Part shown: in pieces, positions 54,778-64,000 of the stretch
Layout: the number at the start of each line of letters is the position of its first letter
How positions within the stretch are numbered: position 1 is the first letter of the stretch
From: Saccostrea echinata
Lineage: Eukaryota
Direction of reading: 5' to 3'
Length of the DNA stretch: 64,000 bases
NCBI RefSeq assembly: GCF_033153115.1
Contig: NW_026889803.1
Span: forward strand, 12,028,001-12,092,000
The notes under the pieces: model-generated
What the model saw: only the letters and a program-made list of their open reading frames with translations
Database searches by the model: none
What the model was told of the DNA's origin: nothing
Position numbers and translations under genes: made by a program

Positions 54778-55017
54778 TTAAGCATTCCTAGAGAGCCAAG
54801 GAATGCATGCTGGCATAGGGATAACATCCTCCGGGGCATAGAAAATACATCCCTCACACATAACGGAACAGTCAAGGGCAATGTCTGACAGAGCTTTAGC
54901 ACAATCAAAATCACAGTCCACTAAGATTGCGTGAATTTGTGTGGCTTCAAAGTCATATAACACATACCACGAAGGGATGCCGAAAAAACATACGACCCTG
55001 GTGAAGATTGTGTCCAT
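54778..55017 (-). CDS. ORF0: 79-aa Cys-rich protein of unknown function upstream of SAM-Gag
   Basis: ATG at 55017; same length as 62341-62580 and 57/79 identical. Confidence 0.75.
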   Translation of the reverse strand: MDTIFTRVVCFFGIPSWYVLYDFEATQIHAILVDCDFDCAKALSDIALDCSVMCEGCIFYAPEDVIPMPACIPWLSRNA

Positions 55018-55489
55018 GGTTAAGGTTTGCAAGGAACAACTAAAACATCTTATACGGTCGTAGTAATTCACATGGTCCAAAAAAAATTGAATTATGGAAT
55101 AAAACAACGTGGATTCTGCCTCGGAGGATTTTCTAAGAAAGTCCACTGTAAACATTGTAAAACAGCATTAATACTATATTAAACATATATTTTATCTAGG
55201 CACATGTATTATCTTTTTGAAAGATATCTTCACAAGCTTAATCGATTGCTAATGTACTCGGTCTAAATTCAGCTATTCTTTTTCCACTTTGTTTGGGATT
55301 ATTGAAACAAAACACAGTTTGTCACTTGCTGTTACACAAACACAAACATCAGTTGTGTCTTTCACATCAATGGCTATAACTTGTCCAAAGCTTGGTCTCA
55401 AAGCAATCTTGTGTCTGCGATATGTGCTGCAAGGAAATATGATCATATATTTCACCTGATCTCTCCATCACCTTCAACAAGGCATAGAA

Positions 55490-55860
55490 TGATGGACCAC
55501 AACAGTTCTTCATACAGTTGGTGTCAAATCTGCTTCTGGTACTAGTGACCAGAATTTCTTCATCTGATAACTGGAAAGAGATTCTGCAACACCATCAATA
55601 TGTATAGCATGAATAACATAGTGATTGCATACTGCATGAAATGTTAAAGTTCTCATTAATTTCATGATGCTTTTGACTTTTGATCTTCCTTTCCTTATAA
55701 TATCAACTGTTGCTTCATTATTGCAATGAAAAAGAATGCGAATTTTATGCCAGGTATGACCTCATAAAAGATAAGCCATAAACAATGGGATAGAGCTCAA
55801 ATGCCATAGATGTAGTGTCTTTTGAAAGGTCAGCAGGAAATTTTTAAAAACAACTGTTTT
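55490..55860 (-). pseudogene. YR-retrotransposon RNase H remnant
   Basis: ELYPIV..ILFHCNNEATVDIIRKGRSK..IMKLMR..AESLSSYQM. Confidence 0.8.
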
Positions 55861-56456
55861 GATAGAAACCTCCAAAAGCTGTATATTTACATCCACTGAA
55901 TGTTATCTCCTTTATTTTTTTAAGAAAACCATTGTCATTTATCAATACATATTTACATCCACTGAATATTATTTCCTTTATTTCTTATAAAAAAAAACCC
56001 CCAATGCCGTTAATCAGTCCATAAAAAAACACTAAGCAAGCCACCTACATAGATTTCTTAAGCAACAACTGTTCAATCAGTTATGCATACAATGACATGC
56101 ACATCTATAATACAATATATAGCATATTTAATTTACTTTGATTTTTTTTAAAAGATATTAATATAAACAATAAAATGTCTTTCTTTGTTTGTTAGTACGG
56201 GAATTAACGTCGCAGCTATTGCAGAAAAAATTCATATATACAAACATTAACAATAAAATGTCTTTCTTTGTGAGTATGGGAATGAATGTTGCACTATTGC
56301 AGAAAAAAATTACAAAACCTGCTTATGCAGCTAGGGTATGTATTTTTTCTGCAACAGCTGAAACATTATTTCCCACACTAACAACCAAAGACAGCATTTT
56401 ATTATTGAATTGATTGACTCCTGATGATGAATCAAAGGTCACAAAACTAATATATT

Positions 56457-56811
56457 ATATAAATATTGCATGTTGTTGAGTGTAACATTGAAAATGTTCA
56501 CCCCAAGAAAACCATTGTCAACCGAGGCGCAGCCTCGGTTGACACTGGTTTTCTTGGGGTGAACATTTTCAATGTTACACTCAACTACATGCAATATTTA
56601 TATAATACTGAATGTTTTATACAAATACATATAACAATGAACCATGCGTGCATAAATTCTGCGCAGTCACTATTTTTTGGAATATCACCCGTCGTCAAGC
56701 AATGTTGACTGTTGCTGCGCTGAAGAGCGTAGCTTCATCATTCAGTGGGTAATAGTGTTTTTTAACAAATGTTTCTCGACGAATCAGATTCAACTAATTT
56801 ACATGAACGTA

Positions 56812-56876
<65 letters not shown>
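56457..56876. mobile_element. Palindromic Crypton-like insertion plus (TA)n tract
   Basis: ~145-bp near-perfect hairpin 56457-56604 centred on ccgaggcgcagcctcgg; absent from the duplicate copy at ~26575. Confidence 0.65.
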
Positions 56877-56879
<3 letters not shown>

Positions 56880-61651: not shown

Positions 61652-62269
61652 TCAACATAATTGCCCATCATCATTATCAGAAAGGATTCTTTCCGTTTGG
61701 AAGTTTGCCATCGAATTAGCGAATTCTGTGATATCTAAGTAGCTAGAATTTGCAGATGGGTTTGAAAGTGATTTTAAATAAATTTGGGGGTCTTGCCAAG
61801 AAAACGTACCTGTATTTTCTAAGGCTTGCACTCCACTTCCACCATAAGACGGGGGCTGATGTCCTGACTGTTGCGCGGAAGACAACTGTCCGAGAACGTT
61901 TCGGATGAAGTTGTCTGATGATTGGTCACACAGTGGTGCCGGAGCTTGGGTTGAGGCGAATTGATCTGTCGCGGACGGTCCTGGTGTGCATGGAATACTA
62001 GGAGTTTCACTGGGTTGGCTCGTCCCGGCTGCGGGTCCGAGTGGAAAAGTGTTTTTAACACAGTGTAAGACCAGATTCCTCTGGCCTACCGGAATCTCGG
62101 TTTGCAACAAGTCTTCTTTTGTCAGTAGAGATAGGGCCTTAATACTATCGTATCCGATCTGGATGAGGGTGGCGGTAGTCCTACTTGACAATTTTTTGGC
62201 CGTAGCCCACTTGCGGACGGCTTCTTCGCCGATCGTGATTGAAACTTCGTTTTCTCCCTCGGATTCCAT
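61652..62269 (-). CDS. SAM-domain Gag N-terminal part, 205 aa, truncated
   Basis: VRKWATAKKLSSRTTATLIQIGYDSIKALSLLTKEDLLQTEIPVGQRNLVLHCV fits the SAM pattern W..L..L..GYD....L..LT..DL....I..G.R..LL. Confidence 0.8.
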   Translation of the reverse strand: MESEGENEVSITIGEEAVRKWATAKKLSSRTTATLIQIGYDSIKALSLLTKEDLLQTEIPVGQRNLVLHCVKNTFPLGPAAGTSQPSETPSIPCTPGPSATDQFASTQAPAPLCDQSSDNFIRNVLGQLSSAQQSGHQPPSYGGSGVQALENTGTFSWQDPQIYLKSLSNPSANSSYLDITEFANSMANFQTERILSDNDDGQLC

Positions 62270-62340
62270 TTTGTTACGTCACCGGAAGTTAATAATCACA
62301 TGAAAACACAGCAAAAACGTGATAATCACAATTAATGAAC

Positions 62341-62580
62341 TTATGCACTCCTGGGATGCCTAGGAATACAGGCGGGCAGTGGAATAATATCCTCGGGATC
62401 GCAGAAAATACATCCGTTGCACATGGCGGAGCAGTCCAGCGCAATGTCAGATAAGGCTTTGGCAATGTCGAAGTCACAGTCTACCAAAATGGCGTGGATG
62501 CGCATGGCCTCATAGTCGTAGAGAATGTACCACGTCAGAAGTCCAAAGAACTGTACGACCCTGGTAGTTACGGCGTCCAT
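62341..62580 (-). CDS. ORF0: 79-aa Cys-rich protein of unknown function
   Basis: Intact ATG to TAA; motif DCSAMCNGCIFCDPED; four homologues in the window. Confidence 0.8.
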   Translation of the reverse strand: MDAVTTRVVQFFGLLTWYILYDYEAMRIHAILVDCDFDIAKALSDIALDCSAMCNGCIFCDPEDIIPLPACIPRHPRSA

Positions 62581-62789
62581 GGTAAGTCACAATGGCACGA
62601 TTAAAACATGTACTTGATCGGCCTTGGACGGTCACACGGAACACACACACACACACACAAAAATTTTTTAACAAGTTTAAATCACAGAGTCAAACGACAT
62701 GGATTCTGCCTCGGAGGATTTTCTAGGAAAGTGATGCTTACTGGCCAAAACATGGGTTGAAATAGATGAATAAAGCGATTTGATTGGAT

Positions 62790-62925
62790 GAAACAGTGGT
62801 TGGATTTAAAAATAGTGCAGCCCGCAATTTGATTGGATAAAAATGACGTAAATAGGTGGTGCTAGTTAGCCACCGATAGAGGGGGTTTAAACAGAAATAG
62901 AAAACCCCAGGATATGATTGGATAA
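62790..62925 (-). promoter_or_regulatory. Putative CCAAT-box promoter in the 5' terminal repeat
   Basis: Three tgattggat (ATCCAATCA on the sense strand) at ~62781, ~62830, ~62915, retained in the diverged 16.8-17.0 kb copy. Confidence 0.5.
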
Positions 62926-63399
62926 TTAATAGGATCGTCCTCCGGGCAGAACCCATTTTTAAATTTAGCAATTAGACCCTTCCAGTGGAAGATTCCATTA
63001 TGGTTAACGTAAAATAAACAAAGAGCAAGTAGATACTGAAGAATACAATGTAAATTAATAATAATTAAACAACTTTAATAACACAAGGAACTCGCATCAG
63101 GTGATAGTCCCTATAACTCCATGCATGCAGGTTTGTTTTAGTAATTAATTGGTCATTATAAATTCTAGCACAACAAACCTGTCCTCACCATTTCTGGTAG
63201 ATAAGTATTCTAGTGTATAAACAAAAAAGTGTTTGTATAATATATAATGTATCTTGCACTAAATTTTAATTCTCAAGTTTATAGGTACTCGCCTTTAATC
63301 TTCTATATTCTTCCATATTGAAATACATCATGGTGATTTGACTGTTCCTTGTGTGGGTTTTAATTTTCTATACAACTTTTGGACACTACATCTAACATG

Positions 63400-64000
63400 G
63401 GTCTTAAGTGACAGCGTTAGCTGTTGCATTATTGGTTTGCGTAGCTGTTTGGCTTTGGGGAGAAGTTTGACGTATGGAGTGCATTAACAAACGTTTTTAT
63501 CCCACAGGAATAGTGGAAGGCAAGTCGTCTTCTGATAGCAGTGATAGAGCCTCCATACTGTCGTATCCAAGTTCTATTATGATATTTGCAGTACAGGTTG
63601 ATAATTTTTTTTCGATCTGCCCACTTTGCTACTCCTTCCTCGCCGACGATCAATTCAATTTCACCGTCTGACAACATGATGCAAGGTGATTTCAATATAA
63701 ACAGATGAAAAGTCAAATGCATATAAACAACAGTCTAATACAATCTACTGCAATTGCTGATTGCGCAGACGGCACACAGGAATTTGAACAAAATCCTCAG
63801 GGGTTGCAAAATTGCAGCCATTGCAAAAAGGGGAACAGTCCATTGAAATGTAGGACAGAGCATCGACGAGCACGTGATTGGCCTCCTGGGTAATTGCAAA
63901 AAGTCTGTCAATTTCCTCATCAGACATAACATACCAGGCTGGAATATTGAAAAACAAATGAACAGAAGAAAGCCTCAGCACCATGTTGCAAGTATTCACA
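63400..64000 (-). mobile_element. Further SAM-Gag YR element fragment (ORF0 63745-63999; gag ATG 63677), runs off the window
   Basis: DCSPFCNGCNFATPEDF; MLSDGEIELIVGEEGVAKWADRKK. Confidence 0.75.

What the first reader, a model, noticed from the sequence alone, without database searches (positions are those of the whole stretch)
54778..63999. Unrecognised Cys-rich accessory gene (ORF0) hard-wired upstream of Gag in a YR-retrotransposon lineage
Seen: four independent elements carry a ~80-codon ORF between the 5' terminal repeat and the gag ATG (6871->~6650, decayed; 55017->54778; 62580->62341; 63999->63745). Shared pattern: aromatic-rich start, [WN]Y[VI]xxxxExx[RQ], a helical segment, then D-C-S-x-[MF]-C-x-[GE]-C-x-F-x-x-P-E-[DE] and a further Cys. 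The two intact copies are both 79 aa and 57/79 identical. Across IHAILVDCDFD, 8 of 11 codons differ and all differences are synonymous, so the protein was under purifying selection. Established: DIRS/Ngaro elements normally encode Gag, RT/RNase H and YR, plus in some lineages a methyltransferase or hydrolase; I know of no such upstream ORF. Inference: the I-x-x-I-L-x-x-C-x-F-D-x-x-x-A-L helix resembles CUE/UBA-like three-helix bundles, followed by a metal-binding Cys cluster. Candidate roles are silencing suppressor, ubiquitin-pathway adaptor or translational regulator of gag.
Basis: partly seen in the sequence, partly recalled or inferred. Interest (0 to 1): 0.82.

Follow-up and report, generated by a model that had tools for sequence, protein, structure and literature searches.

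The report
Small Cys-rich gene before Gag
A group of tyrosine-recombinase (Ngaro-type) retrotransposons in bivalves carries a previously unnamed, selectively conserved gene for a ~78-residue three-helix, cysteine-cluster protein just upstream of gag, so these elements encode an accessory protein whose function is still unknown.

Summary
Four ORF0 copies lie in the window: 62341-62580, 54778-55017, 63745-63984/63999 and a decayed one at 6871->6650. The genome has about 24 copies in five subfamilies, and 16 of 23 are followed on the same strand by a gag with a SAM-like N-terminus.

ORF0 is protein-coding:
- Differences between the two 79-codon copies fall 15/12/45 by codon position.
- pS is 0.81-0.86 against pN 0.15.
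- Similarity ends at the ATG and at the stop.

A profile search of 1.84 billion proteins found 40 relatives, mostly 70-90 aa. None has a Pfam family or an informative name. They include Mytilus galloprovincialis and Crassostrea gigas models in which ORF0 is joined to gag sequence. Two metagenome contigs also carry ORF0 directly upstream of the same gag type. Six to seven related contigs do not, so ORF0 is an accessory gene, not a universal one.

The host element is Ngaro-type: A1-[ORF0, gag, RT/RNase H, YR]-B1A2B2.

AlphaFold gives a three-helix bundle followed by a Cys cluster. The closest named fold is UBA-like, but only at Z <= 3.5, which is not significant. Function is unknown.

My best reading is a trans-acting, probably metal-binding protein translated as the first cistron, with gag reached by reinitiation. 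That part is inference.

The parts
62341..62580 (-). ORF0, subfamily A, intact, 79 aa; ATG in the context ACCATGG
   Evidence: (100% self-match as L001)
62270..62340 (-). 71-nt spacer between the ORF0 stop (TAA) and the gag ATG; poorly conserved between copies (44 of 71)
61652..62269 (-). gag of the same copy: SAM-like N-terminal domain, open for 205 aa and then truncated; reading frame +2 relative to ORF0
62641..63090 (-). 5' terminal 'A' repeat of this copy; about 96% identical to 47849-48300; ends at a (TG)n run about 60 nt before the ORF0 ATG
54778..55017 (-). ORF0, subfamily A, intact, 79 aa (inside a 125-aa ORF that starts at an upstream ATG, 55155)
52869..54706 (-). decayed gag (54706->53579; 45% identical to the L029 gag) and RT fragment (53601->52869; 72% identical) of the 54778 copy
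63745..63999 (-). ORF0, subfamily B-like; 84 aa from the GTG at 63999 or 79 aa from the ATG at 63984; 78% identical to ORF0 of the complete element L029
63413..63674 (-). remnant of the SAM-like gag N-terminus downstream of the 63745 copy
6650..6871 (-). decayed ORF0, subfamily D (in-frame TAG plus a frameshift); the Cys motif is still readable
   Evidence: P0001 is its closest intact relative
5855..6620 (-). gag downstream of the decayed ORF0: it starts like the SAM-type gag, but its core is 50% identical to the gag of the ORF0-less SAP-type lineage (chimera)

Best explanation
ORF0 is a genuine protein-coding accessory gene of a sub-lineage of Ngaro-type tyrosine-recombinase retrotransposons.

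Shown:
- Position. ORF0 sits in the unique internal region just after the 5' split direct repeat (A1). It lies 12-81 nt upstream of a gag whose N-terminus is SAM-like, and the two are on the same strand.
- Evolution. It evolves under purifying selection at the protein level, about as fast as gag.
- Family. It belongs to a diverse, unnamed family of about 78-aa proteins, present in at least Mytilus and Crassostrea besides this genome.
- Conserved motifs: (i) F-x-[IL]-P-x-W-Y; (ii) L-D-C-[SA]-x-x-C-x2(4)-C-x-F-C plus one more Cys; (iii) often a C-terminal R-x-[DNQ] just before the stop.

Predicted:
- A three-helix bundle (residues ~2-53). Its last helix runs into a cluster of four or five Cys.

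Inferred:
- The Cys cluster binds a metal, zinc more likely than Fe-S.
- ORF0 is translated as the first cistron of the genomic RNA. Its AUG always has A at -3 and G at +4, and 4-10 further AUGs lie before the gag AUG. Gag would therefore be reached by termination-reinitiation across the short spacer, as in bicistronic LINE-1 RNA.
- The mostly acidic protein (median pI 4.9) acts in trans as a protein-binding adaptor, for the element's own Gag/RNP or for a host factor, rather than binding nucleic acid.
For: Coding and selection:
-. Codon-position bias is 15/12/45; pS is 0.81-0.86 against pN 0.15; Fisher p = 5e-20. Within subfamily A (leaving out L008), dN/dS is 0.20-0.55. Similarity stops at the ATG and at the stop codon. 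The other five frames are closed.

Copies and linkage in this genome:
-. There are about 24 loci in five subfamilies sharing 33-45% identity. 15 of 22 loci (16 of 23 counting the window's 63745 copy) have the SAM-type gag directly downstream on the same strand.

Host element:
-. L029 has RVT_1 at E 9e-21, RNase H, and a YR with H-x-x-R and a Tyr. A1 and A2 are 100% identical, as are B1 and B2.

Family outside this genome:
- 40 proteins at E <= 1e-3, 14 of them at <= 1e-10, mostly 70-90 aa. One search adds 21 more clusters.
- Mytilus VDI17050.1 is ORF0 joined to a gag core that is 52% identical to the L029 gag.
- Crassostrea gigas XP_034318683.1.
- metagenome contigs L057 and L062 carry ORF0 12-20 nt upstream of the same gag type.

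Fold:
-. Two models from different subfamilies and alignments give the same three helices, with pLDDT 81-93 over residues 1-50.

Translation logic:
- (AUG contexts, intervening AUGs, spacer of 51-71 nt).
- contigs of likely RNA runs cross from the 3' half of ORF0 into gag without a splice joint.

Charge:
-.

Gag N-terminus is SAM-like:
- (best hit E 3.7e-4; the hit list is almost entirely SAM domains).
- (sub-threshold matches to Pfam SAM_1).
Against: - There is no direct evidence that ORF0 is translated. The sequencing runs are only guessed to be RNA, and contigs cannot show transcript starts.
- Reinitiation after an ~80-codon ORF is usually inefficient. That would leave Gag less abundant than ORF0, which is an odd ratio for a structural protein.
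- ATGs occur upstream of the ORF0 ATG if transcription starts inside A1.
- Metal binding is inferred from Cys spacing alone. The Cys tail is modelled at pLDDT 53-72.
- The ORF0 + Gag-SAM complex test gave no answer.
- ORF0 is dispensable for some close relatives.
- No structural or sequence match gives a function.
Confidence: 0.6

Rival explanations
1. ORF0 is mainly a cis-acting regulatory upstream ORF. Translating it, and perhaps stalling of its nascent peptide at the conserved R-x-[DNQ]-stop end, sets how many ribosomes reach gag. On this view the peptide has no job once released.
For: ORF0 lies in the 5' leader with a strong AUG, and several AUGs block leaky scanning to gag. The spacer to gag is short in all lineages: 12-81 nt. 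About 60% of family members end in R-x-[DNQ...] immediately before the stop. Conservation right at the stop is typical of stalling uORF peptides (general knowledge).
Against: Conservation covers the whole 78 residues, with a hydrophobic-core pattern and a confidently predicted globular three-helix fold. A cluster of 4-5 nearly invariant Cys has no role in an exit-tunnel stalling peptide. Some gene models and copies have ORF0 joined to gag or standing alone. The two roles are not exclusive.
Confidence: 0.15
2. ORF0 is the N-terminal domain of Gag, made as an ORF0-Gag fusion by stop-codon readthrough, frameshifting or splicing, rather than as a separate protein.
For: In subfamily B (L029), in L007 and in metagenome contig L057, ORF0 and gag are in the same frame with a single stop between them. 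The Mytilus model VDI17050.1 is an uninterrupted ORF0-gag fusion.
Against: In subfamily A and in L019 the gag frame is +2 relative to ORF0. In L018 and L062 a second in-frame stop lies in the spacer. The arrangement is therefore not conserved. No splice joint was seen in contigs that cross the junction. The spacer sequence is not conserved. The Mytilus protein lacks the SAM-like domain and may be a gene-model artefact.
Confidence: 0.08
3. ORF0 is a fragment of a host gene that was captured or hitch-hiked, or conversely a domesticated host gene, and gives the element nothing.
For: Two loci (L002, L004) hold an intact ORF0 with no gag behind it, and they differ from each other with dN/dS 0.2. 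Related elements do without ORF0.
Against: No non-element paralogue turned up in the 923-Mb genome. All ~24 hits are element copies or their fragments. ORF0 keeps its position and orientation in five subfamilies and in other organisms while diverging to 25-45% identity. That pattern means long co-evolution with the element under selection.
Confidence: 0.05
4. The ORF is a chance open frame over a conserved non-coding RNA or DNA signal, such as a packaging or recombination site.
For: It lies next to the terminal repeat, where cis-acting signals are expected.
Against: Substitutions have a three-base periodicity and synonymous sites are saturated while 72% of amino acids are kept. There are 60+ protein clusters of similar length in other organisms.
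Confidence: 0.01

Closest known systems
Ngaro-type YR retrotransposons, including those with an extra ORF (SGNH hydrolase) in Xenopus and fish
   Same: The host element has the Ngaro plan: gag, RT/RNase H, YR, split direct repeats A1-[ORFs]-B1A2B2 and no methyltransferase (structure as described in PMC8547959 and PMC9210276). Lineage-specific extra ORFs are known in Ngaro elements (SGNH hydrolase, PMC9210276).
   Different: The known extra ORF is an enzyme that lies with or after the pol/YR genes. ORF0 is a ~78-aa non-enzymatic Cys-cluster protein placed before gag. I found no such upstream ORF in the papers I could search.
Bicistronic LINE-1 RNA (ORF1 - short spacer - ORF2)
   Same: Both are retrotransposon RNAs with two non-overlapping cistrons and a short spacer. 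The second cistron is thought to be reached by unconventional termination-reinitiation and is made at a lower level (PMC4091050 abstract; mechanism from my own knowledge of Alisch et al. 2006).
   Different: In LINE-1 the first cistron is the abundant RNA-binding structural protein. Here the first cistron is the small accessory protein and the second is Gag. Translation has not been measured here.
Additional ORFs (aORFs) of LTR retrotransposons, in plants and bdelloid rotifers
   Same: These are lineage-specific extra genes of unknown or regulatory function added to a gag-pol core, and some lie upstream of gag (PMC7264820, PMC5408684: titles and abstracts).
   Different: The element class differs (integrase-based LTR elements), the sequences are unrelated, and ORF0 is much smaller.
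UBA/CUE-like three-helix bundles (EF-Ts N-terminal domain, Mex67/TAP, Dsk2, Dcn1)
   Same: A compact three-helix bundle of ~50 residues. UBA-like domains account for 7-12 of the top 50 structural matches for two independent models.
   Different: Z is only 2.5-3.5 with rmsd 3-4 A, below the tool's significance guide. There is no Pfam or PDB sequence match. The helix 1-2 loop is long (9 residues, I-P-x-W-Y) rather than the short MGF/MFP loop. A Cys cluster is appended.
Small retroviral accessory proteins such as Vpr/Vpx (three helices plus a zinc site; host-factor adaptors)
   Same: An analogy only, from my own knowledge: ~100-aa helical-bundle accessory proteins encoded by retroelements, which bind zinc and redirect host proteins.
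   Different: No sequence or structural match was found. Position in the genome and element class both differ.

Membership tests
Ngaro-type YR retrotransposon (the host element) | Encodes a tyrosine recombinase instead of a DDE integrase | tested here: met
   The 348-aa ORF at L029 3907-4953 has weak Pfam Phage_integrase and SAM-like-domain hits, with H-S-F-R and a downstream Tyr readable. It is 63% identical to the YR in L032 and 29-31% to the YRs of the other lineage in the window.
Ngaro-type YR retrotransposon (the host element) | RT plus RNase H, no methyltransferase domain, gene order gag - RT/RH - YR | tested here: met
   RVT_1 at E 9e-21 and RT_RNaseH in L029 2307-4028. The YR ORF overlaps its end, leaving no room or hit for a methyltransferase.
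Ngaro-type YR retrotransposon (the host element) | Split direct repeats A1-[ORFs]-B1-A2-B2 | tested here: met
   L029: A1 255-878 equals A2 5765-6388 (100%); B1 5608-5772 equals B2 6426-6590 (100%). Contigs join B1 to A and A to B.
Ngaro-type YR retrotransposon (the host element) | RT/YR group with the Ngaro clade rather than DIRS1 or PAT in a phylogeny | not tested
UBA / CUE domain | Sequence match to the family profiles | tested here: not met
   None of 38 members hits UBA or CUE in Pfam, even at E <= 5. The PDB profile search gives nothing relevant.
UBA / CUE domain | Compact three-helix bundle superposable on solved UBA/CUE domains | tested here: inconclusive
   Three helices are predicted with pLDDT 81-93. 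UBA-like chains recur among the matches, but at Z 2.5-3.5. Foldseek finds nothing at E <= 1.
UBA / CUE domain | Binds ubiquitin through the short helix 1-2 loop (MGF/MFP) and helix 3 | not testable with these tools
   The loop here is a 9-residue I-P-x-W-Y segment. Binding needs an assay.
Known zinc-finger / zinc-knuckle families (CCHC, FCS/MYM, B-box and others) | Profile match to a curated family | tested here: not met
   No recurrent Pfam family. The only hits are single chance matches at E 0.02-3.4.
Conserved-peptide regulatory uORF | Lies in the 5' leader of the main ORF on the same mRNA, and its AUG is met first by scanning ribosomes | tested here: inconclusive
   Position and AUG context fit. 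Contigs cross from ORF0 into gag. The transcript start is unknown, and whether the runs are RNA is a guess.
Conserved-peptide regulatory uORF | Peptide-dependent control of downstream translation | not testable with these tools
   Needs a reporter assay or Ribo-seq.
SAM domain (N-terminus of the linked Gag) | Profile similarity to solved SAM domains | tested here: met
   Profile A6 hits SHIP2/EphA2, Caskin and Eph-receptor SAM domains (best E 3.7e-4, and the list is nearly all SAM). Pfam SAM_1 matches are sub-threshold, E 0.011-0.085.

The most novel reading that the evidence does not exclude
ORF0 is the first regulatory accessory protein known for tyrosine-recombinase retrotransposons. It would be a metal-binding (zinc or redox-sensitive Fe-S) three-helix adaptor that the element makes ahead of Gag in order to engage a host pathway, for example ubiquitin-like signalling or piRNA/chromatin silencing, or to control polymerisation of Gag through its SAM domain. 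Functionally it would resemble the small accessory proteins of complex retroviruses.
Probability: 0.15. Interest if true: 0.8.

Novelty: new variant of a known kind. Interest (0 to 1): 0.6.

Why it matters
YR retrotransposons (DIRS, Ngaro, PAT, VIPER) are the least understood retroelement order. Their textbook gene set is gag, RT/RNase H and YR, sometimes with a methyltransferase or a hydrolase. A conserved fourth gene gives a new handle on how these elements are regulated or deal with their hosts. This one is small, probably metal-binding, placed before gag, and found in several bivalves and in unidentified organisms. It also defines an unnamed protein family: 60+ clusters, no Pfam family, labelled 'hypothetical' or 'uncharacterized' in Mytilus and Crassostrea annotations. 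That family could be added to TE and protein databases, so that bivalve gene sets stop reporting it as host genes. The bicistronic layout is also a natural test case for reinitiation after a long first ORF in molluscs.

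Tried and rejected
- Word-based protein search with a single ORF0: no hit. 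With a 10-sequence profile: one hit.
The scan with the gag core worked.
- ESM Atlas: best score 0.87, all MULE-type or unnamed clusters, below the 0.9 guide.
- Foldseek against PDB and BFVD: nothing at E <= 1.
- VIA-align wide: best Z 3.7 and 3.4.
- PDB sequence profile: only chance ferritin matches at E 0.1.
- Pfam on 38 members: nothing recurrent.
- Complex prediction, ORF0 + Gag SAM-like domain + Zn: score 0.00, 'no answer'. This is not evidence either way.
- Idea that ORF0 plus the SAM domain is a mobile module found with two unrelated gag cores: dropped. It rested on one decayed chimeric copy (window 6871), while L015/L032 of the same ORF0 subfamily has the usual gag, pol and YR.
- Idea that ORF0 lies inside the terminal repeat, which would explain the gag-less copies L002 and L004: rejected. 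In L029 and in the window the repeat ends before the ORF0 ATG.
- TURBS-like reinitiation motif: not seen by eye.
- Gag tree to test single versus multiple origin of ORF0: too few rows, and the L062 row is frameshifted. It only suggests patchiness.

Full report
OBSERVATION

- 62341-62580(-) and 54778-55017(-) are open and 79 aa each.
- 63745-63999(-) is 84 aa from a GTG, or 79 aa from the ATG at 63984.
- The copy starting at 6871(-) is broken by a TAG and a frameshift but keeps the Cys motif.

The two 79-aa copies are 72% identical, i.e. 57/79. The '8 of 11 codons, all synonymous' stretch can be read directly from the alignment.

IS IT CODING?

- Between the two A-type copies, nucleotide differences fall 15/12/45 on codon positions 1/2/3.
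- Nei-Gojobori counts give pS 0.81-0.86 (saturated) against pN 0.15 (Fisher p = 5e-20).
- Within the closer A-type copies dN/dS is 0.20-0.55.
- In a four-copy DNA alignment, similarity begins at the ATG and ends within ~15 nt of the stop.
- The other five frames all hold stops.

This rules out a chance ORF or a purely RNA/DNA-level signal.

COPIES IN THE GENOME

Six-frame searches of the 923-Mb assembly find about 24 loci. They fall into five subfamilies sharing only 33-45% amino-acid identity, and at least 13 frames are open. In 15 of 22 loci (16 of 23 with the window's 63745 copy) the SAM-type gag N-terminus follows on the same strand within about 160 nt. Six loci lie within ~135 kb of contig C54, around the window.

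THE HOST ELEMENT

L029 is a copy whose repeats are 100% identical. It reads as follows:

| Feature | Coordinates in L029 |
|---|---|
| A1 repeat | 255-878 |
| ORF0 | 955-1194 |
| gag (SAM-like N-terminus, CCCH finger at the C-terminus) | 1264-2373 |
| RT/RNase H | 2307-4028 |
| YR | 3907-4953 |
| B1 repeat | 5608-5772 |
| A2 repeat | 5765-6388 |
| B2 repeat | 6426-6590 |

This is the Ngaro plan as described in PMC8547959 and PMC9210276. The gag N-terminal profile hits almost only SAM domains in the PDB (best E 3.7e-4).

A second Ngaro-like lineage in the window (23191->18473 and 47456->43566) has a gag whose N-terminus gave one sub-threshold Pfam SAP hit (E 0.0028) for the 46950-47456 copy. 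Its RT is only ~30% identical to L029's, and it has no ORF0.

OUTSIDE THIS GENOME

- A profile HMM search of 1.84 billion representative proteins gave 40 hits at E <= 1e-3, of which 14 are at <= 1e-10. Nearly all are 70-90 aa.
- A word search with a wider profile added 21 clusters.
- None has a Pfam domain. The only names are 'hypothetical protein', 'C3H1-type domain-containing protein' (Mytilus galloprovincialis VDI17050.1) and 'uncharacterized protein LOC109618616' (Crassostrea gigas XP_034318683.1).
- The Mytilus model is ORF0 joined in frame to a gag core 52% identical to L029's. The Crassostrea model is a decayed ORF0 followed by a gag piece.
- A metagenome scan with the gag core returned 13 contigs. 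An ORF0 HMM hits two of them, L057 and L062, on the gag strand, with the stop 12-20 nt before the gag ATG.
- Six to seven other contigs have >= 900 nt of upstream sequence and the same SAM-type gag but no ORF0.
- A small gag tree suggests a patchy distribution but is too thin to count gains and losses.

So linkage to this gag type is reproduced in independent organisms, but ORF0 is accessory, not universal.

THE PROTEIN

- Size and charge: median 78 aa, median pI 4.9, 65% of members net acidic.
- Nearly invariant positions (window copy numbering): P15, Y18, E24, D49, C50, C54, C57, F59, C60, and usually one further Cys (C71). The family splits into C-x3-C-x2-C-x2-C and C-x3-C-x4-C-x2-C groups.
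- About 60% of members end in R-x-[DNQ...] right before the stop.
- Two AlphaFold2 models, an A-type with 38 sequences and a B-type with 56, agree on helices 2-12, 22-34 and 39-53. pLDDT is 81-93 there and 53-72 in the Cys tail.
- No search gives a significant relative: Foldseek PDB and BFVD, VIA-align with best Z 3.7 and 3.4, PDB sequences, Pfam, ESM Atlas.
- UBA-like domains are the most frequent named fold among the weak matches: 7-12 of the top 50 at Z 2.5-3.5.

HOW IT MAY BE EXPRESSED (INFERENCE)

- The ORF0 AUG has A at -3 and G at +4 in every subfamily, and reads ACCATGG in subfamilies A and B.
- Four to ten further AUGs lie between it and the gag AUG, so leaky scanning is unlikely.
- The gag AUG lies 51-71 nt after the ORF0 stop in this genome, and 12-20 nt after it in L057 and L062.
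- The gag frame relative to ORF0 varies (0 or +2), and second stops occur in some spacers. A conserved readthrough fusion is therefore unlikely.
- Contigs from four small runs, which are guessed to be RNA, cover almost the whole element. Two of them cross from the 3' half of ORF0 into gag without a joint. This fits one unspliced RNA but proves neither transcription nor its start.
- The layout resembles bicistronic LINE-1 RNA (PMC4091050).

FUNCTION

Function is unknown. I commit to a trans-acting, probably zinc-binding protein-interaction module. The reasons are its globular fold, its invariant Cys cluster and its acidic charge. A dual role as a translational gate for gag is possible. A predicted-complex test with the Gag SAM-like domain gave no answer.

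NOVELTY

The literature searches found the standard three-ORF description and the SGNH-hydrolase extra ORF, but no gene upstream of gag. Repbase and Dfam could not be checked. The scan's own notes hold nothing on this family elsewhere.

LIMITS

- The nature of the sequencing runs is a guess.

Noticed in passing
window 18473-23191 (-) and 43566-47456 (-): There is a second Ngaro-like YR-retrotransposon lineage. The 46950-47456 gag gave one sub-threshold Pfam SAP hit (E 0.0028) at its N-terminus; the 21998-23191 gag gave none. The lineage's RT is ~30% identical to the ORF0-bearing lineage, its YR is intact at 18473-19441, and it has no ORF0.
   Followed up: partly
window 62641-63090 vs 47849-48300: The 5' 'A' repeat of the ORF0-bearing copy at 62341 is ~96% identical to the 5' repeat of the ORF0-less SAP-type element at 47456. 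The two diverge at a (TG)n run. This looks like recombination or template switching between the two lineages.
   Followed up: partly
window 5855-6871 (-): This is a chimeric copy. A decayed D-type ORF0 and the first ~25 codons of a SAM-type gag are joined to a gag core that is 50% identical to the SAP-type lineage.
   Followed up: partly
window 47878-47940, 55080-55142, 62670-62732: A conserved ~60-nt block (81-97% identical) lies near the inner end of the 5' repeat and is shared by both lineages. It may be a cis-acting site (promoter, priming or recombination).
   Followed up: no
L002 (G000:C28:602374-602610) and L004 (G000:C9:44422361-44422597): Both hold an intact ORF0 with no gag behind it. 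Both lose similarity to full copies ~14 nt after the stop, and L002 runs into a (TG)n run there. The pair differ with dN/dS 0.2. They may be truncated 5' fragments or possibly domesticated copies.
   Followed up: partly
G000:C54:12.08-12.16 Mb (window and the next ~70 kb): Six of the ~24 ORF0 loci cluster within ~135 kb, some nested or head-to-tail. This suggests the elements insert into one another or into a preferred region.
   Followed up: no
window 30127-31914 (-): An intact 595-aa piggyBac-type transposase ORF (DDE_Tnp_1_7, E 3e-94, plus its zinc finger).
   Followed up: no
window 56453-56607: A near-perfect palindrome with 76-nt arms, 97% complementary, and a 3-nt loop.
   Followed up: no
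L005 (G000:C9:40487194-40487415) and L006 (G000:C24:4554-4775): Two identical decayed ORF0 loci on different contigs, with the same stops. This is probably an assembly duplicate or a recent segmental duplication.
   Followed up: no
L059, L060, L064, L066 (metagenome contigs): A subgroup of SAM-type gag proteins carries a ~100-aa N-terminal extension, with an F-G-F-A-M-W-D motif, instead of a separate ORF0.
   Followed up: no
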